Below, piece by piece: positions 7,940 to 50,451 of a stretch of 64,000 bases of DNA. The position numbers were made by a program, and so were the translations under genes. The stretch lies in sequence record ON190024.1; one strand, written 5' to 3'. The notes beneath the pieces are model-generated. The model saw nothing but the letters and a program-made list of their open reading frames with translations, did not search any database and was not told where the DNA came from. Position 1 is the first letter of the stretch; every line of letters begins with the position of its first letter.

Positions 7940-7947
7940 TATAAATA
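7940..7947 (+). promoter_or_regulatory. T4-type late promoter
   Basis: Exact TATAAATA. Confidence 0.85.
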
Positions 7948-7949
7948 TC

Positions 7950-8037
7950 AATGTAGCTAGGTTTAGCGGCTGAAAAGACGTTGCTCGGTACACGTCCTGC
8001 TACATTATCAAGTACCGCGTCCTTTACCGAGGGATAT
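7950..8037 (+). ncRNA. Candidate structured cis-acting leader RNA (copy 1)
   Basis: Stems AATGTAGC/GCTACATT and GACGT/ACGTC around TTTAGCGGCTGAAAA; same architecture on minus strand at 46394-46484. Confidence 0.6.
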
Positions 8038-8580
8038 ATGAAACTACACGAAATCTTCAACATTTCTGATCTTGAGGATCAGATTGGCGTGTGTGTTATC
8101 GAGAATGCTTTTGACGGAATAGTTGAGGGTGTTGATTACACGCTAGAAAACGTACCTGCTTGTCATGATGATGTAACGCGAACTGTAATTGGCGAAGCAT
8201 TGAAGAAGAATTGGCAAGACAAATCATACCGAGATAAGACGAACAAAGCTCGTGCTGAAGCTCATGCTAAATGTACTTCATGGGGTCAAACAGACGAGGG
8301 TAAACGTTCTATTGCTGATTATCACCGAAAGACACAGAATAGACCATGGAAAGCTAAACGCTTTCAATCGGGAAAGGAGTGTTTAGAAAGGTGGGTAAAT
8401 CTGCGATACTATTACTCGGACTGGCTCAAGCACGATAAGCCATCGCCATACAGATTCTCAAAAATCATGAATCAAAAGTCAGCTTATTACTTTGAAACAG
8501 TAATTAAGTATTTTTATGAACACGGTGATCCATCATCGGACGCCGAATATTTATTATGGGAAACGAACAATGTCATTTAA
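8038..8580 (+). CDS. Inserted hypothetical protein between 45 and 44, possibly a homing-endonuclease relic
   Basis: Own late promoter and GAGGG SD; NUMOD-like basic helix (RTVIGEALKKNWQDKSYRDK); no catalytic motif seen. Confidence 0.6.
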   Translation: MKLHEIFNISDLEDQIGVCVIENAFDGIVEGVDYTLENVPACHDDVTRTVIGEALKKNWQDKSYRDKTNKARAEAHAKCTSWGQTDEGKRSIADYHRKTQNRPWKAKRFQSGKECLERWVNLRYYYSDWLKHDKPSPYRFSKIMNQKSAYYFETVIKYFYEHGDPSSDAEYLLWETNNVI

Positions 8581-11088: not shown

Positions 11089-12579
11089 ATGACAATCTAT
11101 ACATCAATTGAACGAATCGGCTCTAATCTTTGCGAACGCTACATCGACGACGACGGTTTTGAGCATATGCGCAAAGTGAAATACGAACCGACGTTGTTCA
11201 TTCACTGCAATGAAGAAACTGGATACAAAGACATTTACGGTCGCAACTGTCGCCCTAAGATGTTTGACACAATGGGCGAAGCGAGTAAGTACATCAAAGA
11301 CACGAAGCAGTTCAACGAAGTGCTTGGTATGGATGATTTCATCGTTACGTATATCTCAGATGTGTATAAGCAGCGTGAATTCGATATGTCTCGCATTCGC
11401 ATTGCTAACATAGATATTGAAACTCCGTCTGTGGAGTTCCCTGAAGCAGCACATGCGCCAGTGCCAATCACGTCAATTGGTCACTATGACAATATCGACG
11501 ATAAATTCTACGTTTACGGTATCCCGTCAAACACTGAGTGGAAACGCGAAAGCAGCATCGTTAAGCCAGAGCTTCTAGAAAAGACTGTTTATATTCGCTG
11601 TGCCACAGAAAAAGAGCTACTTGTTAAGTATCTTCAATTCTGGCGTGAGAAAACACCAGCAATCGTAACAGGTTGGAACATTGAATCGTTCGATATGCCG
11701 TACATCGTCAACCGATACAAGAATCTGTTTGGCGAGAAAGTGATGAACAGCTTGTCACCATGGGGTAAAGTTCAAGTATCAACTACAGTCAACGACTACG
11801 GTCAAGAAATCTGTAAAGTGAACATTCTCGGCGTATCTGAACTCGATTATCTTCAACTTTACAAGAAATTCACGTATGTGACACGACCATCATATCGTCT
11901 AGATTACATCGGTGAAGTTGAGCTTGATGAGAAAAAGGTCGAGTTCGAACAAGCGAACTACCTTGAGTTCTATGAGCAAGATTATCAGAACTTCATTGAC
12001 TACCAGATTCAAGACGTTAACTTGGTTAAGCGTCTAGATGAGAAGCTTCAGCTAATGCTTTTGACTATCTCTCTAGCGTACTACGCGGGTATCAACTATC
12101 AAACGGTATTAGGCACAATCAAACCGTGGGATGCAATCATCTTTAACAGCTTGAAAGCTGAGAAGAAGGTTGTTCCGATGATGCGTTCTCACGAAGGTGG
12201 ACGATTCATGGGTGCGTTTGTTAAAGCGCCTCAAGTGGGTTATCATCGTGGAATTGGCTCATTCGACTTGACATCACTATACCCGTCGATTATTCGCGAA
12301 TGTAACATTTCACCAGAAACAATCGTTGGTCAGCTTGACTACGAAGGGTCTCTTGAAGACCGTATCGACAAGATTGTTGAAGGGTTGATCACGTTCCCTG
12401 CTGATGATCTATCAAACAGCGCGAACGGTATGCAGTATCGCAAAGACGTACGCGGCGTGATTCCAGTTGAAATTGAGAAGGTTTTCTTCCAGCGTAAGGA
12501 AGCGAAGAAACTCGCGTTTGCTCATGAACAGAAAGTGATTGATGCAGAGGCTGAAATGAAACGAAGAGGTCTGATGTGA
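11089..12579 (+). CDS. 43: Family B DNA polymerase gp43, N-terminal part (exonuclease, palm motif A, first fingers helix)
   Basis: DIET ExoI, GWNIESFD ExoII, YQIQDV Exo[15 protein letters not shown]; ends at fingers tip with TGA. Confidence 0.95.
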
Positions 12580-12812
12580 AAATTGGGTATTGGCTCTCAG
12601 TAGTAAAGAGAGCCTATTTTCAGAAAAATGAGTTTTTGAAAGATGGGTCATCGACTAATGGCGTAATTGTTCCTGATGATTTCATTGGAACTAAGAGTCG
12701 AGCACGCGAAGAAATAAAACAAACTCTTTGTGCATTGTGGGTGCGGTATAAATGGGTCTTTACGTTGTTAGGTGTGATTGCAACGCTGATGACAGTTTTT
12801 CAAATCCCATGA
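12576..12812 (+). CDS. Small hypothetical protein with C-terminal hydrophobic segment, inside gene 43 insert
   Basis: GTG start overlapping 43A stop; [16 protein letters not shown]. Confidence 0.45.
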
Positions 12813-12952
12813 TATTATCGACGGTCTCTGGGTGAGGTGACGCTATGAAAATAGCGTCCTTTCCTGTCATTATACGATACAGACCGTCTTTGCCGTATAG
12901 CTTGATTGCATTTTCGATTGTTGTCACTGTACCTGACAGTGAACAATGGCGT

Positions 12953-13588
12953 CTAATTAGTAGTTGCATGGTCGATTACCTTCCATTCTGCCCACTTCTT
13001 TGCTTTTGAAAAGCAACGATAGCGTACTTTAGTTTGTGGTATATTGTGTTGTTCGGCTGCTAAACTAGCAACTTTGAATTCACCGAGTGGCGTGATCCAT
13101 GTGTAATCAGTACCAGCTTTCGGTTGATGCTTTTTACTTTCGGACATTCTCTTCTTGGTGTCTTCAGAGTGAGTCTTATCAAGCATACCCCGCGGGTGAT
13201 TGATACGAGCAGGGTTCAAATCGCCAACCCATTTACCTTGTTCGATGTTAATTTGGCGTATTTTCTCTTTAACGTCATCACGCTTAGATGGATTGTTCTC
13301 TGTCATATACTGTGAGTGTCGCTTTCTAGCGTGCTCATATGCGTATGACGGGATTTTCATATTACCTGACATGCGTATGATAGGAAGCCACATTGTACCG
13401 CCGTGAATGCGTGCTAAGAGCATGTGAGCTATATAGTGTTCTTTTGCAGTCAGTGCAATCATATTTTCAGCATCATCCGACCCACCTAAGCTGCGTGGTA
13501 CGATGTGATGCATTTCAGTATACCCGTCGATTGATTCTCGTTCTTTGCGTGTCTCAATTAGACGGTCGTAATGTTTCTGATAATTCAT
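12953..13588 (-). CDS. HNH homing endonuclease (Mob-like) with NUMOD-type tail
   Basis: EMHHIVPRSLGGSDDAENMIALTAKEHYIAH; late promoter TATAAATA at 13619-13626 minus; start placed at second ATG. Confidence 0.9.
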   Translation of the reverse strand: MNYQKHYDRLIETRKERESIDGYTEMHHIVPRSLGGSDDAENMIALTAKEHYIAHMLLARIHGGTMWLPIIRMSGNMKIPSYAYEHARKRHSQYMTENNPSKRDDVKEKIRQINIEQGKWVGDLNPARINHPRGMLDKTHSEDTKKRMSESKKHQPKAGTDYTWITPLGEFKVASLAAEQHNIPQTKVRYRCFSKAKKWAEWKVIDHATTN

Positions 13589-13618
13589 GTTTATCCCTAT
13601 AGATTCTTGAGTTATCAT

Positions 13619-13626
13619 TATTTATA
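13619..13626 (-). promoter_or_regulatory. T4-type late promoter
   Basis: TATAAATA on minus strand. Confidence 0.8.
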
Positions 13627-13655
13627 AAAGTTGATCAGACATTTGCGAGACATAA

Positions 13656-14756
13656 ATGACAATTGATAAAAATATTTCAGAAATGACCGACGAAGAGCTA
13701 ATCGCGTATCGTGATGAGCATAAACAGCAAGCAAAAATCTTCGACGTTCAACAAATGGCGAAAAAAATCCTAATCAACTCACTCTACGGAGCCTTAGGGA
13801 ACGAGTATTTTAGATTCTATGACTTGCGTAACGCTGAAGCAGTAACAGCTTACGGTCAGCTTGCAATCAAGTGGGTAGCGCGTGACGTGAACATTTGGTT
13901 GAACAAAGTTTGTAAGACAACTGACAAAGACTACGTGATTTACGGTGATACCGACTCAATCTACGTTAACTTTGATCCGCTGCTTGAACTGACAGGCATC
14001 AACAAGCTTGAGGGTGACGACTACACAGACAAATTCGCTAAAGTATGTGAGACTGTTGAAACGAAAGTTATCAACCCGTCATACGAAGCACTTCACAAGT
14101 ACATGAACACGTACGAGCGTCAAATGTTCATGGATCGTGAGGTACTAGCACGTACTGGCTTCTTTATCGCGAAAAAGCGTTATGCACTTGACGTACAAGA
14201 TAACGAAGGCATTCGTAAACCGAAGCTGAAAATCATGGGTATTGAGACTCAACGTAGTTCAACACCACCACTTTGCCAAAAAGGTCTTAAAGAAGCAATT
14301 CGTTTGATTCTGCAAGAAGGCGAAGCGAAGCTTCAAGAATTTGTAAAGGGGTATGAGAAAGAGTTCAAGGCAGCTCCATATCAAGAAGTGTCATTTGTAT
14401 CTAGTGCAAACAACATGAACAAATACTCTGATGATAAAGGCAATCCTGGTAAGGGATGTCCAGGTCACGTGAAAGGCGCGCTGTACTACAACAAACTTGC
14501 TGAAGAGCACGGGTTCGACAAGATCAACGAGGGTGACAAAATCGCTGTTGTGTTCTTGACTCGAAACAAGCACGGTATTGACCGTATTGCTTATCCGTCT
14601 GGTGGCAAATTGCCTGAAGCAATCTCATACTTGATTGATCACGTTGATTACAATCGTCTGTATGAAGATAAGTTCATCAAACCGTTGAGCGCGATTTCTG
14701 AAGCAATCAATTTCGACTACAAGAAAACAATCACTTTGGAGAGTTTCTTTGGCTAA
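13656..14756 (+). CDS. 43: Family B DNA polymerase gp43, C-terminal part (second fingers helix, palm, thumb)
   Basis: [25 protein letters not shown], terminal clamp-binding LESFFG. Confidence 0.95.
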
Positions 14757-18787: not shown

Positions 18788-19333
18788 ATGACTGAAGTAT
18801 TAATCACAATCGCTGCAATTGCATTTGTAGCACTCGTAGTAACACTGATCGTACGTGCTCGTACCAAGCAAAAAGAAGAAGCTGCGAATGCATTGTCAAT
18901 GCGTGAAGCTGCGGCTAATCGCACACGTGAACAACTCGAATCAATCAGCGCAATGAGTAACGGTGCTTCTCGTATGAAGCCTAAAGCTCCATCACGACCT
19001 GCGAGTTCTTCTCGACATAGCGCACCATCACGTTCTCGTACGCGACGTGACGACGATGACATCATCACGAACCCGCTGCACCCGTTAAATCCGATTACTG
19101 ACCCGGTCGGTCTGTATGAACGCGATGAACCGGTACGTGAAACACGCTCAGAACCAAGCTACTCTGCACCTGAGCCGAGTTACAGTGAGCCAGAACGTAG
19201 TCCGAGCGTATCAAGCCCAGGCAGCTACTCATTCGGTGGTAGTTCGGATAGCGGCTCAAGCTACTCAAGCTCAAGTGACAGTGGTTCAAGTTACTCAAGC
19301 AGCGATAGTAGTTCAGGTGGGAGCTTCGACTAA
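18788..19333 (+). CDS. Membrane-anchored protein with Ser/Gly-rich low-complexity tail
   Basis: N-terminal TM; C-terminus SSSSDSGSSYSSSDSSSGGSFD. Confidence 0.7.
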   Translation: MTEVLITIAAIAFVALVVTLIVRARTKQKEEAANALSMREAAANRTREQLESISAMSNGASRMKPKAPSRPASSSRHSAPSRSRTRRDDDDIITNPLHPLNPITDPVGLYERDEPVRETRSEPSYSAPEPSYSEPERSPSVSSPGSYSFGGSSDSGSSYSSSSDSGSSYSSSDSSSGGSFD

Positions 19334-19931
19334 TGATTGTATCTGAAATTCGTGGCGACTTGGTCGCCACCCTTGCTCAAGCAATTGAAAATCCGAATCA
19401 TCAACGTACGTTTATCATGGGGCAGGGTTGTAACTGCTTTATCAGACAAGGTTCTGGCATTGCAGGTCAGCTACGGCGTTTCCCTGAAGTATATCAAGCT
19501 GATATTGACTACGGTCGTGAAGGCGATCCGTTGAAACTTGGTGAATTCTCTGTTGCATTGTTCNNNNNNNNNNNNNNNNNNNNNNNNNNNNNNNNNNNNN
19601 NNNNNNNNNNNNNNNNNNNNNNNNNNNNNNNNNNNNNNNNNNNNNNNNNNNNNNNNNNNNNNNTGTTCCACAAGCTGCTGTGTTCAACCTGTACACGCAG
19701 TTTAGTATGGGGACTCGTGAGCGTCATGCTGAATATTCAGCAATCAAAGAAGGCGTTCGCGCTATGGTTCGCTACCTTGAAGACAATGACGACAAGATCT
19801 ACTTGCCATTAATCGGTGCTGGATTAGCTGGCGGCGATTGGGAAATCATTCGCCATATCATCGACAAATCAAGTGGAAATAAAGAAATTGTCATTGTACA
19901 TTTCGAAGAAGGCACACTAATCGACTGGTGA
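19333..19931 (+). CDS. Macrodomain (Appr-1-p processing, T4 tk.4-like) protein spanning an N gap
   Basis: GCNCF..GSGIA before gap; FNLYTQF and LPLIGAGLAGGDW after gap. Confidence 0.75.
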
Positions 19932-20980: not shown

Positions 20981-22662
20981 ATGAAACTGTTTACTGAATT
21001 TTATCAAGAAGTTCGACTTGACGAAATCTCAGATCGTGCGAATATCGACATTGATTGGGATTGGGGTCATGAGAACGGTACGGGAGAAACTTCGGCGAGA
21101 TTTGACGCAGCCGGTGAGAAATTCCAAGTTAGCGTTGACGAGAGTAACCCGGGTTATTTCACGATCACATTCCAGAACTCTAGTGGCTATTCTCAGACTG
21201 GTAGAGCGGGACACTCTGCGGCTGCTGTATTCTCTGGAGTATTGACGACTTTACGTGAATTCACCGAAACGTACGAAGAAGAAATGGGCATGAAACCATA
21301 TGAATATGACTTCAGCGCAGCGTACGAACTACCGCGAAATCACGACTATTACTCATTGGTTAACAATCGTCGCGAGGCAACTCGTTTAGATGAAGAAAGC
21401 AAGAAAAAGCTATTGAAAGACTTGATTTCTCGCCCTATGCTTTACTACGCACTATCGTTGACTTTTGGTAAAGAATACGGCTATTCAACTGAAATTAGCG
21501 ACCGTTGGCTTGCTCGTCTTGCAGGGGGCGCGAATGATTTCCGTTCCGTTCGTAAGAACGTGACTCGAAGCATTCTGTCGATGAATGACAGCGACGTTAA
21601 CCAAGCGTTGATGAACATGAGCGGTTCTGTTTCGTTCACTCTTACCAACGAAAACGAACGTCCTAGCAGCTACGACACAGCATTCGGTGGCGGTCCGTCT
21701 CTTGAAGACTACGTTGATGAAGCAGACCAATACCAAATCGAAGCGTGGATCAATGATGGTCGTGAAGATGAAATCATCGAACATGCTGATTGGCAAACTC
21801 TAGTTCGCATTGCGGAATGGGGTCTGATGCACGATGAACTGATTTTCCATGATGATGAAGACGTTCGAAACGCGGTAATTCGCACAGACTACGAAATGGG
21901 CGAGAAACTAGCCGAATCGCCTGAGTGGGAACATCGTAAACAAGCTGCTGAAAATGGTTTTGGCATTTGGGATCTTGTTCTTGACTCTGACGAAGACGTG
22001 CGNNNNNNNNNNNNNNNNNNNNNNNNNNNNNNNNNNNNNNNNNNNNNNNNNNNNNNNNNNNNNNNNNNNNNNNNNNNNNNNNNNNNNNNNNNNNNNNNNN
22101 NNTAATTCGCACAGACTACGAAATGGGCGAGAAACTAGCCGAATCGCCTGAGTGGGAACATCGTAAACAAGCTGCTGAAAATGGTTTTGGCATTTGGGAT
22201 CTTGTTCTTGACTCTGACGAAGACGTGCGCGAAGCTGCATGGGACTGGTCGTTTGAAAATGACGATGCTGATACTCGAATCACATACGCGAAACGCTACG
22301 AAGGCAACTTCGGTCGAGCAATGGCTGAAGACGTGTGGGATCGCATGATCGACGATTCAGATGACTATGAAGAGCGTCAATACGTAGCTGAACAAGGTTA
22401 TCGTCTTGAAGAACTTCTAGCAGACCATGACGAAGACGTGCGTTCTTCTGCAATCAATGCTGTGTTCACAGTAATGGGTCTGGATGGTCGAGAAGCGGCT
22501 GAGTTCTTGATGGAAAACTCTGAACCTTACCAAGAAGAAGTGTTTGAATACGCGATTAACGGTAACTTCGGTCCATCTTTCGATGAAGCACTAATCGAAA
22601 TTGCTGAAGAAAACGGCGTTGATGTTTCTGAGTACAAAGACGAAGAAGACGAAGACGAATAA
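20981..22662 (+). CDS. Acidic protein with HEAT-like repeats, candidate internal head protein (484 aa if the gap duplication is collapsed)
   Basis: CTAAATA upstream; DEDVR repeats; 21876-22002 equals 22103-22229 across the N gap and collapsing restores one frame. Confidence 0.7.
22003..22102. other. 100-N scaffold gap flanked by a 127-nt exact duplication
   Basis: Identical sequence either side of the gap. Confidence 0.9.
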
Positions 22663-45639: not shown

Positions 45640-45786
45640 ATGACTTTGATTGAAGTGATAACGTTCATGCGTGAGAACGAATCATTGAGACAATTGTATG
45701 AAGACCCTGAAACTGGCGTACTTCATACAATCGTACGAAAGGATGATGGTTTTTATGTGAACGATTCTAAGATTTGTGATCTTTAA
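45640..45786 (+). CDS. Small protein (48 aa), paralog of 49606-49761
   Basis: FMREN...ETG..H...DGFY...KICDL shared with paralog. Confidence 0.65.
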   Translation: MTLIEVITFMRENESLRQLYEDPETGVLHTIVRKDDGFYVNDSKICDL

Positions 45787-46393
45787 GTTTGCAATTGTCG
45801 AAATGCCATCTATGCATCGCAGAAGAACCGCCTGATTTATTGCAATGTGGACACTGTACTAATGGCTTTGGTTTGCCTTTTAGTGAGTCTGACACTTTTT
45901 GTTTGTGTTCATCGGTTAACGTTACTCCGGTACGATCAAATGCTTGACGCTGTTTCTCATTCATTGAATCAGCATTGCCTTTGTTCCACGGTGTTCTGCC
46001 TTTCATCTTCTGCTTTGTCTCTTGTGAAAGGGTTCGACCAGTCAGTGTTTTTGATATTTTCTGTCTTGTCTCTTCGGAAACCGAACGATGCGAGTTTTCA
46101 CGTATGACTTGAAACATTCTTGATGTTGTGCGTGTACGTGATTGTTCACTATTTGATATTAACATCATATTCGCAGCGTACCATAACTTACCTCCGTGAA
46201 TCTTAGCAAGCAATAAATGCGCTATGAAGTGTTCGCGTGCAGTCATTGCGACTAGGTTATCGCTGTCGTCAGTTCCGCCTAAGCAGCGTGGGATTATGTG
46301 ATGTACTTCAACGTAGCAAGGAGCTGAAGATTTAGACCAGTTTCTAGATTGACACTTCTCGATTAGAAGTGTATAATGCTTTTCGTAATTCAT
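45767..46393 (-). CDS. HNH homing endonuclease (Mob-like) with NUMOD3 and C-terminal zinc finger
   Basis: EVHHIIPRCLGGTDDSDNLVAMTAREHFIAH; CPHC...RWHFDNCK. Confidence 0.9.
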   Translation of the reverse strand: MNYEKHYTLLIEKCQSRNWSKSSAPCYVEVHHIIPRCLGGTDDSDNLVAMTAREHFIAHLLLAKIHGGKLWYAANMMLISNSEQSRTRTTSRMFQVIRENSHRSVSEETRQKISKTLTGRTLSQETKQKMKGRTPWNKGNADSMNEKQRQAFDRTGVTLTDEHKQKVSDSLKGKPKPLVQCPHCNKSGGSSAMHRWHFDNCKLKDHKS

Positions 46394-46484
46394 TGTTAGT
46401 CCTCAGTGACTAGCAGACTTTTGGTGAAAATGTGACAGGTTGGAGTCTGAGTGAACCAACTTTTCGACCGCTAAATCTAGTCAC
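46394..46484 (-). ncRNA. Candidate structured cis-acting leader RNA (copy 2)
   Basis: GTGAC-T-AG/CT-GTCAC and GTTGG/CCAAC stems around TTTAGCGGTCGAAAA; covaries with copy 1. Confidence 0.6.
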
Positions 46485-46489
46485 GATAT

Positions 46490-46497
46490 TATTTATA
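46490..46497 (-). promoter_or_regulatory. T4-type late promoter
   Basis: TATAAATA on minus strand. Confidence 0.85.
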
Positions 46498-49609: not shown

Positions 49610-49761
49610 TTAGTCAAGAACTTATTCGAGTCATTATGTTCATGCGCGAGAACAATAGTAATCGCGCTGGCTATTATAATGATGAGACTGGTGAGATTCA
49701 TGTGGTAACCCGTCGAGAAGACGGGTTCTACATTGGAAGGACTAAGATATGTGAACTATGA
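49606..49761 (+). CDS. Small protein (51 aa), paralog of 45640-45786
   Basis: ATGA-coupled to rIIB; FMREN...ETG.IH...EDGFY...KICEL. Confidence 0.65.
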   Translation: MISQELIRVIMFMRENNSNRAGYYNDETGEIHVVTRREDGFYIGRTKICEL

Positions 49762-50451
49762 TTTATGTTTGCAGTTGTCAAAATGCCAGCGTTTCGATGC
49801 TGGCAATGTTGTTTCTTTGCAACAATGCGGGCACGTTACTTTTATGTTGTTTGGGTTATTTCTCTTCATTCGTTCTCGTTTTTGTTCGCGCTCTTCGTCG
49901 GACATGTTTTCTGCACGTTTTCTACTTGCTTCAGAAATCTTTCGACGTGCTTCCTCACTGTGCGACTTGCCATACATGCCGTGATTCTCGCCTGAGTTGG
50001 CTTGAGATAACTTAGATTTCGTTTCATCTGACATCGCGCCTCTTTTCTTACCACGCTTTGCATCTGCCATCTTTCTGCGAGATTCTAATGATGCCTTCTT
50101 CCCTTTGTTGTGTGGTGTTGTTCCTTTCTTAGCCTCTGACATCTTTCTCTTTGATTCATCTGTGTGCTTATACCCGTTTATTCTCCCTATGCCCCCGGGT
50201 ACTAGATTGTAATTGCTTTCTGATAGTACATACTCTTCAGTTACAATTTTTGATTCAAGTTCGTACATTTCTTCTTCTGTACCCGACGCAATAACTTCCA
50301 TATCTTCAAATGTGATACCATACTTGCGTATTGCTTGACCGATTGCGTAATCTTTACGAGCGTGTTCGTTGAATCGACGCTTCAAGTCGATAGTTACTCC
50401 GATGTACTCTTTACCGTTAACCGGATTTGTTATTTTGTAGAGATAAGCCAT
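49756..50451 (-). CDS. GIY-YIG homing endonuclease (Seg-like) with NUMOD3 repeats and C-terminal zinc finger
   Basis: YLYKITN..NGKEYIGVT..LKRRF.EH, YNL; CPHC...RWHFDNCK; TATAAATA at 50483-50490 minus. Confidence 0.9.
   Translation of the reverse strand: MAYLYKITNPVNGKEYIGVTIDLKRRFNEHARKDYAIGQAIRKYGITFEDMEVIASGTEEEMYELESKIVTEEYVLSESNYNLVPGGIGRINGYKHTDESKRKMSEAKKGTTPHNKGKKASLESRRKMADAKRGKKRGAMSDETKSKLSQANSGENHGMYGKSHSEEARRKISEASRKRAENMSDEEREQKRERMKRNNPNNIKVTCPHCCKETTLPASKRWHFDNCKHKS

What the first reader, a model, noticed from the sequence alone, without database searches (positions are those of the whole stretch)
7940..8040. Covarying pseudoknotted RNA leader shared by two unrelated inserted ORFs (second copy 46394-46497, minus strand)
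Seen: both loci read TATAAATA, a few nt, outer stem with one bulged T, a conserved 15-nt junction, an inner 5-bp stem and a loop. Copy 1: AATGTAGC-T-AG-G-TTTAGCGGCTGAAAA-GACGT-tgctcggtac-ACGTC-CT-GCTACATT. Copy 2: GTGAC-T-AG-A-TTTAGCGGTCGAAAA-GTTGG-ttcactcagact-CCAAC-CT-GTCAC. Stem sequences differ but pairing is kept. In both, the loop has two mutually exclusive downstream partners: a proximal one (CGGTAC/GTACCG at 8012-8017; CAGACT/AGTCTG) and a distal one overlapping the SD (CTCGGTA/TACCGAG at 8025-8031; CTCAG/CTGAG in ACTGAGGA). The downstream ORFs are an HNH endonuclease and a catalytically unrecognisable ORF. The other two endonuclease genes here lack it. Inference: a translational switch (riboswitch-like or protein-bound), a small ribozyme, or a mobility signal that travels with these elements. 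I do not recognise it as a named Rfam family.
Basis: partly seen in the sequence, partly recalled or inferred. Interest (0 to 1): 0.85.

Follow-up and report, generated by a model that had tools for sequence, protein, structure and literature searches.

The report
int-alpA RNA leader before phage nucleases
Both loci are real copies, scoring just under threshold, of an already catalogued RNA motif of unknown function (Rfam int-alpA); it sits at the very 5' end of the mRNA of inserted phage genes and looks built to expose or block their ribosome-binding site.

Summary
The window holds exactly two copies: covariance model scores 62.6 and 59.6 bits, next best 14.6.

The motif is not unnamed. Both copies match Rfam RF02996 (int-alpA RNA, Weinberg 2017) over the full model at 32.0 and 31.0 bits, just under the 35.8 gathering score. 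All 16 relatives tested pass it, including ones with the identical core.

In 50 viral and 31 bacterial members with distinct loops, the P3 loop matches a proximal site 5-14 nt after P1 (92% vs 10% in swap controls). It also usually matches a distal site in the loop of a small hairpin that holds the Shine-Dalgarno (62-84% vs 17-20%). The start codon lies 28-45 nt after P1, and a -10 box ends just before P1.

Downstream genes are mostly free-standing nucleases (HNH, GIY-YIG, EndoVII, T5orf172), DUF1376 proteins, antirepressors and island cargo.

Best reading: a portable, cis-acting, two-state translational governor whose input is unknown. It is a new member of a known orphan family, of moderate interest.

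The parts
7940..7947 (+). Copy 1: TATAAATA, the T4-type late promoter box. Predicted +1 is G7953, so the late transcript would begin with GUAGC of P1.
   Evidence: The spacing rule (TATAAATA at -13..-6) comes from established T4 knowledge, so +1 is inferred.
7950..8006 (+). Copy 1: int-alpA three-way junction. P1 7950-7957/7999-8006; UA 7958-7959; P2 hairpin 7960-7971; GAAAA 7972-7976; P3 7977-7981/7992-7996 with loop L 7982-7991; CU 7997-7998.
   Evidence: Rfam RF02996 at 32.0 bits, model positions 1-71. Model R1 at 59.6 bits. Family covariation.
8012..8017 (+). Copy 1: proximal partner P (GTACCG), complementary to loop CGGTAC.
   Evidence: Family statistics.
8019..8035 (+). Copy 1: SD hairpin (GUCCUUU/GAGGGAU, -5.5 kcal/mol) holding distal partner D (TACCGAG 8025-8031) and the SD GAGGGA.
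   Evidence: for the fold. for the family statistics on D and its overlap with the SD.
8038..8580 (+). Copy 1 cargo: a 180-aa orphan ORF inserted between gp45 and gp44. Its 3' end overlaps the gp44 start.
   Evidence: No Pfam or PHROG match. Found only in 7 KVP40-like phages. The site is empty in KVP40. The structure model is unusable, pLDDT 40.
46490..46497 (-). Copy 2: TATAAATA late promoter box. Predicted +1 is G46484, the first base of P1.
   Evidence: +1 is inferred from the T4 spacing rule.
46432..46484 (-). Copy 2: int-alpA three-way junction. P1 46484-46480/46436-46432; UA 46479-46478; P2 46477-46466; GAAAA 46465-46461; P3 46460-46456/46443-46439 with loop L 46455-46444; CU 46438-46437.
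   Evidence: Rfam RF02996 at 31.0 bits. Model R1 at 62.6 bits.
46414..46419 (-). Copy 2: proximal partner P (AGTCTG), complementary to loop CAGACT.
46397..46412 (-). Copy 2: SD hairpin (TAGTC/GACTA) whose loop ACTGAG holds distal partner D (CTGAG 46406-46402). The SD is GAGGA.
45767..46393 (-). Copy 2 cargo: HNH + NUMOD3 homing endonuclease next to rIIA.
   Evidence: Pfam HNH and NUMOD3. phrog_655 homing endonuclease, E 4.7e-56.

Best explanation
Each locus is a self-contained expression cassette: own promoter, an int-alpA-class leader RNA, and a cargo gene.

The leader starts at or within a few bases of the transcription start. It folds into a three-way junction (P1, P2, P3) with near-invariant junction bases.

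The P3 loop (L) can pair with either of two downstream sites:
- P, a proximal 'decoy' site 5-14 nt after P1. This forms a pseudoknot and leaves the ribosome-binding hairpin's loop free. Translation is permitted, though damped by the hairpin.
- D, a distal site in the loop of the small hairpin that carries the Shine-Dalgarno. This loop-loop pairing, together with the hairpin stem, buries the SD. Translation is off.

P is transcribed first and is on average slightly more stable. Nascent RNA should therefore start in the permissive state and be shifted, or relax, to the blocked state.

The net effect is low, gated or pulsed translation of nucleases and other potentially harmful cargo wherever the cassette lands.

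Shown here by comparison: the helices, both complementarities, their positions, and the promoter and start-codon spacing.

Inferred: which state is on or off, and what sets the balance. The conserved junction suggests a specific partner (ligand, ion, host protein or ribosome), but a purely kinetic timer is equally open.
For: Structure:
- Three-way junction: 93.8% of pair cells are paired. 269 cells change on both sides against 83 in shuffles (0/500 shuffles reach this). Slid controls score 0.05-0.10 against 0.829.

L-P pairing:
- At least 5 Watson-Crick bp in 92% of 50 distinct-loop viral members against 10% in swap controls (p 2e-41). In 31 bacterial members, 90% against 13%.
- P starts 5-14 nt after P1.

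L-D pairing, counted strictly after P:
- At least 5 Watson-Crick bp in 62% against 17% (p 1.6e-12) for viral members, and 84% against 20% (p 3e-14) for bacterial members.
- D is enclosed by a hairpin in 42/50.
- D overlaps the SD core in 37/45 viral and 28/28 bacterial members.

Mutual exclusivity and balance:
- P and D use the same loop bases, 84% overlap.
- Their duplex energies are nearly balanced, -8.2 against -7.1 kcal/mol.

Position in the transcript:
- The start codon lies 28-45 nt after P1 in nearly all members, always on the same strand.
- A -10 box matching at least 5/6 is present in 32/50 against 12% of control windows, ending mostly 4-7 nt before P1.

Cassette behaviour:
- Promoter, leader and ORF are one inserted block relative to KVP40.
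- The leader is 100% identical in phage D482 while the gp45 flank has diverged.

Cargo:
- About 30 of 79 distinct downstream proteins are free-standing nuclease families. T4-type phages are known to restrict translation of such genes by RBS-sequestering structures (PMC2988022).
Against: - No experiment exists. No paper on int-alpA function was found.
- Single-sequence folding energies are not exceptional, with z from -0.06 to -0.85. All support is comparative.
- About one third of viral members have a weak D (under 5 Watson-Crick bp), so the blocked state may not be universal.
Junction invariance in my set is therefore circular and the sample is not random.
- Sequences are not phylogenetically independent.
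- Start codons were assigned heuristically.
- Rfam types the family as an sRNA, not a cis element.
Confidence: 0.55

Rival explanations
1. Passive 5' module. The junction plus L-P pseudoknot is only a compact, autonomous 5' cap. It stabilises the mRNA (an obstacle to 5'-end-dependent RNase E attack) and insulates the ribosome-binding site from whatever sequence the cassette lands next to. There is no switching, and the L-D match is secondary.
For: - The RNA begins at the transcription start.
- L-P is nearly universal while D is weaker or absent in about a third of viral members.
- The cassette inserts into varied contexts.
- The topology (three-way junction plus P3-loop-to-3'-tail pseudoknot) resembles exonuclease-resistant RNAs. 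This is from my own knowledge, not tested.
Against: - D complementarity is far above control in two independent sets, uses the same loop bases as P and overlaps the SD.
- Stabilisation alone would not need about 16 conserved junction bases.
Confidence: 0.15
2. Trans-acting small RNA, as in Rfam's typing and similar to the phage P1 c4 RNA. A short RNA ending after P1, made by termination or processing, accumulates. Its free loop L pairs with the D loop of full-length mRNAs, giving dose-dependent negative feedback. P protects each mRNA's own loop in cis.
For: - Rfam type is 'Gene; sRNA', and the Rfam consensus has a U-run after P1.
- The E. coli island copies have a GC-rich P1 followed by UUCUUUUU or similar.
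- Near-consensus -10 boxes are common.
- The three-element L/P/D logic fits this model.
Against: - A U-run of at least 4 within 10 nt of P1 occurs in only 9/50 viral and 6/39 bacterial members.
- Copy 1 in the window has no U-run and copy 2 has only U4.
- The fixed 28-45 nt distance to a start codon in nearly every member marks a cis leader.
Confidence: 0.1
3. Small self-cleaving ribozyme that processes the 5' end of the cargo mRNA.
For: Compact three-way junction with conserved junction bases including GAAAA. Small ribozymes are common in phage DNA (my own knowledge).
Against: - No match to any Rfam ribozyme family, even at E up to 10.
- Junction strand lengths of 2, 5 and 2 nt do not fit a hammerhead.
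- The RNA already sits at the transcript's 5' end, so there is nothing upstream to remove.
Confidence: 0.03
4. DNA-level signal: a recombination or nuclease recognition site, or single-stranded DNA structure, used in mobility.
For: It travels with mobile genes and lies next to integrase genes in bacterial islands.
Against: - The helices contain many G-U pairs that would be A-C on the other strand. P2 alone has U-G at two positions in 19-30 of 50 members.
- The motif is always on the coding strand at a fixed distance from a start codon and SD.
- The nuclease families downstream are unrelated and could not share one site.
Confidence: 0.02

Closest known systems
Rfam RF02996, int-alpA RNA motif (Weinberg et al. 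2017, PMC5737381)
   Same: - Full-length match to the model.
- Same three-way junction and the same conserved CUAG...A..GG.CGAAAAG...CCUG.
- Same 3' tail site complementary to the P3 loop (consensus loop CCuU, tail AgGG).
- E. coli island copies show the same P site and SD hairpin.
   Different: - The two window copies score 32.0 and 31.0, below the 35.8 gathering score, so a standard Rfam scan misses them.
- They sit in a lytic T4-type Vibrio phage behind late promoters, not next to an integrase or alpA gene.
- Rfam types the family as an sRNA, whereas the data here point to a cis leader.
RBS-sequestering hairpins of T-even homing endonuclease genes: I-TevI/II/III, segB, Aeh1 mobE (review PMC2988022)
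   Same: - Late promoter directly upstream of a nuclease gene.
- SD held in an RNA structure.
- Purpose of limiting nuclease translation.
   Different: - Those are simple hairpins, unrelated to each other in sequence.
- Their late promoter lies inside the structure, so late transcripts escape it.
- Here the promoter lies upstream of the whole conserved three-way junction, and the control element is a loop with a decoy partner.
Phage P1/P7 c4 antisense RNA of the immI operon (from my own knowledge; not tested here)
   Same: A structured RNA encoded in the leader of the genes it controls. Its loops match two sets of sites, one of which covers the ribosome-binding site of the next gene.
   Different: - c4 is processed and acts in trans.
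- It uses two loops.
- It has no conserved three-way junction core.
- It is not the family matched here.
Pseudoknot-forming translational riboswitches such as SAM-II and preQ1-II/III (from my own knowledge)
   Same: - Small aptamer-sized RNA.
- A loop-to-3'-tail pseudoknot that involves the SD region.
- Conserved core bases.
   Different: - No ligand is known.
- Downstream genes share no metabolic pathway.
- A built-in decoy site is not a usual riboswitch feature.
Kinetically controlled leaders: the MS2 maturation-gene 5' UTR and hok mRNA (from my own knowledge)
   Same: Translation is possible only before a long-range pairing that covers the SD has formed. They are used for genes needed in tiny amounts or that are toxic.
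   Different: No sequence or structural relation. Those lack a conserved junction core shared across many unrelated genes.

Membership tests
Rfam RF02996 int-alpA RNA | Covariance-model score at or above the curated gathering score (35.8 bits) | tested here: not met
   Window copies score 32.0 bits (7950-8020 +) and 31.0 bits (46487-46417 -), full model 1-71, E about 5e-5 to 9e-5 in 301-nt searches. The whole-window gathering scan gave 0 hits.
Rfam RF02996 int-alpA RNA | Close relatives with the same core are accepted members | tested here: met
   All 16 tested viral loci pass the gathering score (36.7-57.2 bits). They include L014, L017, L022, L001, L003, L009 and L005, which have the same P2 sequences as the window copies.
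Rfam RF02996 int-alpA RNA | Three-way junction P1/P2/P3 supported by covariation | tested here: met
   93.8% paired, 12 of 17 pairs with changes on both sides, covariation score 0.829 against 0.244 in shuffles and at most 0.10 when slid. The alignment was fitted to the model, which favours the structure somewhat.
Rfam RF02996 int-alpA RNA | Conserved junction bases (C)UAG, loop A, GG, (C)GAAAAG, CCUG | tested here: met
   Present in both copies and upper-case in the Rfam consensus. Invariance in my own set is forced by the search pattern.
Rfam RF02996 int-alpA RNA | Location between an integrase gene and an alpA-type regulator | tested here: not met
   The E. coli copies lie right after a tyrosine integrase and before a variable ORF and an HTH regulator. 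The window copies lie between gp45 and gp44 and next to rIIA in a lytic T4-type phage. Context gives the family its name but is not part of the model.
Metabolite riboswitch | Conserved aptamer-like core joined to an expression platform that covers the SD | tested here: met
Metabolite riboswitch | Downstream genes share a pathway or transport theme that points to a ligand | tested here: not met
   Downstream genes are HNH_3 17, DUF1376 15, HNH 4, Endonuclease_7 3, GIY-YIG 2, antirepressors, helicase, and many with no family.
Metabolite riboswitch | Specific ligand binding that changes the structure | not testable with these tools
   Needs in-line or SHAPE probing.
T-even type late-promoter/RBS-hairpin control of homing endonuclease genes | SD sequestered in an RNA hairpin | tested here: met
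   SD hairpins at 8019-8035 and 46412-46397.
T-even type late-promoter/RBS-hairpin control of homing endonuclease genes | Late promoter lies inside the inhibitory structure, so late transcripts lack its 5' arm | tested here: not met
   TATAAATA lies upstream of the whole motif and SD hairpin in both copies. The rule is described in PMC2988022.
Self-cleaving ribozyme | Match to a known ribozyme family | tested here: not met
   Only int-alpA is found at E up to 10.
Self-cleaving ribozyme | Site-specific self-cleavage | not testable with these tools
   Needs an in-vitro transcription and cleavage assay.
Trans-acting sRNA | Own promoter and an intrinsic terminator directly after the structure | tested here: inconclusive
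   Promoter: yes. Terminator-like U-run of at least 4: only 9/50 viral and 6/39 bacterial members, with none in copy 1 and U4 in copy 2.

The most novel reading that the evidence does not exclude
int-alpA is a true sensor class. Its conserved three-way junction binds a signal common to many bacteria (small molecule, ion, or a host component such as the ribosome). Binding flips the P3 loop between its decoy and the SD hairpin. That would make it a portable expression governor that homing endonucleases, antirepressors and island cargo genes carry with them across phages and satellites of several phyla.
Probability: 0.2. Interest if true: 0.8.

Novelty: new member of a known kind. Interest (0 to 1): 0.45.

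Why it matters
The motif has been in Rfam since 2017, but I found no study of its function. The comparison here adds several things:
- It reclassifies the motif from a presumed sRNA to a 5' leader placed at a fixed distance from a start codon.
- It shows a three-element logic (loop, decoy, SD hairpin) kept across dozens of unrelated sequences.
- It shows that free-standing homing endonuclease genes of at least five unrelated families, in lytic phages as well as prophages and islands, carry it as part of their mobile cassette.

If the two-state model is right, this would be a widespread, modular solution to a known problem: how selfish nucleases are kept at harmless levels. It would also be a compact natural part for tight translational control.

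On the practical side, standard Rfam thresholds miss AU-rich members such as these two.

Tried and rejected
- Whole-window Rfam scan at gathering threshold: 0 hits. Only the E-value mode on short pieces revealed int-alpA.
- Weinberg 2017: the main text does not mention int-alpA and no supplement is held. I could not check what the authors said about a pseudoknot or context.
- Literature searches for int-alpA, RF02996, and homing endonuclease leader RNA found no functional study.
- Single-sequence folding: z-scores near zero, and the minimum-energy folds differ from the family structure. Not informative.
- Search for a partner covarying with the two P2 loop forms (UAGC vs GACG): none found.
- Family-wide test of an alternative helix between the P1 5' arm and the leader, which is 8 bp in copy 2: not above control, 1/50.
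- Terminator idea: the linker is pyrimidine-rich, but U-runs are infrequent.
- The idea that island cargo genes are known defence genes: no consistent PADLOC match.
- Identity of ORF 8038-8580: no Pfam or PHROG family, no homologues outside seven KVP40-like phages, and the AlphaFold model is unusable at pLDDT 40. No fold search was run on it.

Full report
OBSERVATION. The two loci read exactly as described.

Copy 1 (+ strand):
- TATAAATA 7940-7947
- outer stem AATGTAGC 7950-7957 with GCTACATT 7999-8006
- inner stem GACGT/ACGTC with loop TGCTCGGTAC 7982-7991
- GTACCG at 8012-8017
- TACCGAG at 8025-8031
- ATG at 8038

Copy 2 (- strand):
- TATAAATA 46497-46490
- GTGAC 46484-46480 with GTCAC 46436-46432
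- loop 46455-46444
- AGTCTG 46419-46414
- CTGAG 46406-46402
- ATG at 46393

The shared 21-nt core occurs twice in the window against 0.02 expected. A covariance model finds only these two sites, at 62.6 and 59.6 bits, with the next best hit at 14.6.

The window is the last 64 kb of Vibrio phage PVA8, a KVP40-like T4-type phage.

The two downstream ORFs are unrelated:
- One is an HNH+NUMOD3 homing endonuclease.
- The other is an orphan found only in seven KVP40-like phages.

The other two inserted nuclease genes are an HNH gene that splits the DNA polymerase gene at 12953-13588(-), and SegD at 49756-50451(-). Both have TATAAATA followed by plain 30-31 nt leaders.

WHAT IT IS. A routine Rfam scan of the window reports nothing. 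E-value-mode scans of the two 301-nt pieces each give one full-length hit: RF02996, int-alpA RNA, at 32.0 and 31.0 bits against a gathering score of 35.8.

The Rfam structure is a three-way junction: P1, UA, a 4-bp hairpin P2, GAAAA, P3, CU, P1'. The differences between the copies (G vs A, CT vs TC) are compensatory changes in P2.

I scanned IMG/VR with the exact core, which gave 23 loci. Of 100 of those loci, 90 are covariance-model hits. All 16 tested with Rfam pass the int-alpA gathering score, including loci whose P2 is identical to the window's.

P2 varies continuously between the U-rich form seen here (GRUUUAGCGGYY) and the GC-rich E. coli form (GCCCGACGGGGC). The window copies are therefore ordinary, slightly sub-threshold members of a known family.

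On a 50-sequence alignment the three helices show strong covariation:
- 93.8% of pair cells are paired.
- 269 cells change on both sides, against 83 in shuffles.
- Slid controls score about 0.1 against 0.83.

FAMILY-WIDE ANATOMY BEYOND THE JUNCTION. This holds across the family with completely different sequences in each member.

I used one representative per distinct loop sequence and took loops swapped between members as the control.

Proximal site (P):
- At least 5 Watson-Crick bp in 92% of 50 viral members against 10% in controls.
- 90% of 31 bacterial members against 13%.
- It starts 5-14 nt after P1.

Second site (D), counted strictly after P:
- At least 5 Watson-Crick bp in 62% against 17% for viral members.
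- 84% against 20% for bacterial members.
- It lies in the loop of a small hairpin in 42 of 50.
- It overlaps the Shine-Dalgarno core in 37/45 viral and 28/28 bacterial members.

P and D use the same loop bases (84% overlap). Their duplex energies are nearly balanced at -8.2 against -7.1 kcal/mol.

Other shared features:
- The SD hairpin follows P within 0-3 nt.
- The start codon lies 28-45 nt after P1 in almost every member, always on the same strand.
- The linker after P1 is pyrimidine-rich.

The canonical E. coli copies were found in 220 of 5426 complete genomes, right after an island integrase gene next to yicC. They have the same layout: loop ..GCCUUA, then UAAGGC, then the hairpin GCGU-aaAGGUg-ACGC, then one base, then AUG.

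CONTEXT. A -10 box matching TATAAT in at least 5 of 6 positions is present in 32/50 members, against 12% of control windows. It ends mostly 4-7 nt before the first P1 base, so the RNA sits at the very 5' end of its own transcript.

In the window the box is the T4 late consensus TATAAATA. With the usual T4 spacing the start would be G7953 and G46484. Both RNAs would then begin with a 5-bp P1 (GUAGC, GUGAC). This is an inference.

Four of the five TATAAATA in the window precede the four inserted genes.

Compared with KVP40, the block from just after the gp45 stop codon to just before the gp44 ribosome site has replaced KVP40's terminator hairpin. That block carries promoter, leader and ORF. In phage D482 the leader is identical base for base while the adjacent gp45 end has several substitutions. 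The leader therefore travels with its gene.

Among 79 distinct downstream proteins from viral contigs:
- 17 are HNH_3 (several with AP2 or NUMOD4).
- 4 are HNH.
- 3 are endonuclease VII.
- 2 are GIY-YIG.
- 3 are T5orf172/DUF723 type.
- 1 is DUF559.
- 15 are DUF1376.
- A few are antirepressors.
- 2 are DUF927.

In bacterial genomes the cargo is mostly unannotated, with no consistent match to known defence proteins.

True hits in bacterial genomes are mostly Pseudomonadota. A few come from metagenome-assembled genomes of other phyla.

MECHANISM. The best-supported reading is a cis-acting, two-state translational governor.
- L-P pairing closes the junction into a pseudoknot and leaves the SD hairpin loop free.
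- L-D pairing, together with the hairpin stem, buries the SD.
- P emerges from the polymerase first and is slightly more stable. Nascent RNA should therefore be permissive and later be driven, or relax, to the blocked form.

This gives low or pulsed synthesis of nucleases and other risky cargo. It fits what is known of T-even homing endonuclease genes, whose translation is limited by RBS-sequestering hairpins combined with late promoters (PMC2988022).

Here, however, the promoter lies upstream of the whole structure, so the T-even trick of starting transcription inside the hairpin does not apply.

What sets the balance is unknown. The conserved junction bases argue for a specific partner. The lack of any metabolic theme among the cargo genes argues against a classical metabolite riboswitch. 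A purely kinetic timer remains possible.

RIVALS.
- A passive 5' stabiliser or insulator would explain L-P and the 5'-terminal position, but not the D statistics.
- A trans-acting sRNA, as Rfam types it, would explain the three-element logic. It is weakened by the rarity of terminator-like U-runs and by the fixed distance to a start codon.
- A ribozyme has no support.
- A DNA-level role is contradicted by the many G-U pairs and the strict strand and spacing relation to the start codon.

NOVELTY AND LIMITS. The motif itself is known (Weinberg et al. 2017; Rfam RF02996). The window adds two sub-threshold members in a new setting.

I could not read the 2017 supplement. I therefore cannot say whether the pseudoknot or the nuclease association was already noted there. 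I found no later functional work.

Limits of my member sets:
- They were collected with a pattern that fixes the junction bases.
- The sequences are related to one another.
- Start codons were assigned by a simple SD-plus-ORF rule.

Thermodynamic folding of the single sequences is unremarkable, so the case rests on comparison alone.

Noticed in passing
window 11089-14756: The DNA polymerase gene is annotated in two pieces (11089-12579 and 13656-14756). They are separated by an oppositely oriented HNH endonuclease gene (12953-13588, -) with its own TATAAATA at 13626-13619. Its N-terminus (MNYQKHYDRL) resembles that of the HNH gene behind copy 2, yet it has a plain 30-nt leader.
   Followed up: partly
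window 7940, 13619, 46490, 50483, 54967: Only five exact TATAAATA occur in 64 kb (1.9 expected). Four of them lie directly in front of the four inserted genes: the orphan ORF, two HNH genes and SegD. These genes sit in an otherwise early/middle replication-gene region.
   Followed up: partly
window 46484-46477 and 46413-46406 (- strand): In copy 2 the P1 5' arm plus junction (GUGACUAG) is perfectly complementary to CUAGUCAC, which forms the 5' arm of the SD hairpin. This 8-bp helix dominates the minimum-energy fold. The feature is not shared by the family, 1/50.
   Followed up: yes
P2 loop, alignment A4 columns 16-21: The P2 hairpin comes in two discrete forms. One is U-G closing pair with loop UAGC (28 of 50). 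The other is C-G closing pair with loop GACG (22 of 50). Three positions change together, and no covarying partner was found elsewhere.
   Followed up: partly
window 8570-8580: The orphan ORF behind copy 1 runs through the gp44 ribosome-binding region and overlaps the gp44 start by 11 nt. In phage V07 the same ORF matches in two pieces, suggesting a frameshift and decay.
   Followed up: no
KVP40 locus L140 about 525-570: The empty gp45/gp44 site in KVP40 carries a terminator-like hairpin (GGGGCGTAACAGCCCC followed by T7). The cassette has replaced it in PVA8, so gp45 transcription may now read into the cassette and gp44.
   Followed up: no
L189 3953-4010 and 5855-5912: A Fuerstiella (Planctomycetota) metagenome-assembled contig carries two near-identical int-alpA leaders, with the same loop, P and D, in front of two different ORFs 1.9 kb apart.
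   Followed up: no
L024-L027 (E. coli islands next to yicC/rph): The ORF directly behind the canonical int-alpA RNA differs between strains: four unrelated 281-317 aa proteins without Pfam or PHROG families. They share an HTH-like N-terminal stretch and are followed by an HTH regulator, Icd-like and AntA/AntB genes.
   Followed up: partly
L039 12407-12491: A DUF3800-VII RNA (RF02967, 50.5 bits) lies about 800 nt downstream of the int-alpA/HNH_3 cassette on the same viral contig.
   Followed up: no
window 19333-19563 and 20981-22002: The public PVA8 record marks two coding regions as disrupted by sequencing gaps, and the record is a partial genome.
   Followed up: no
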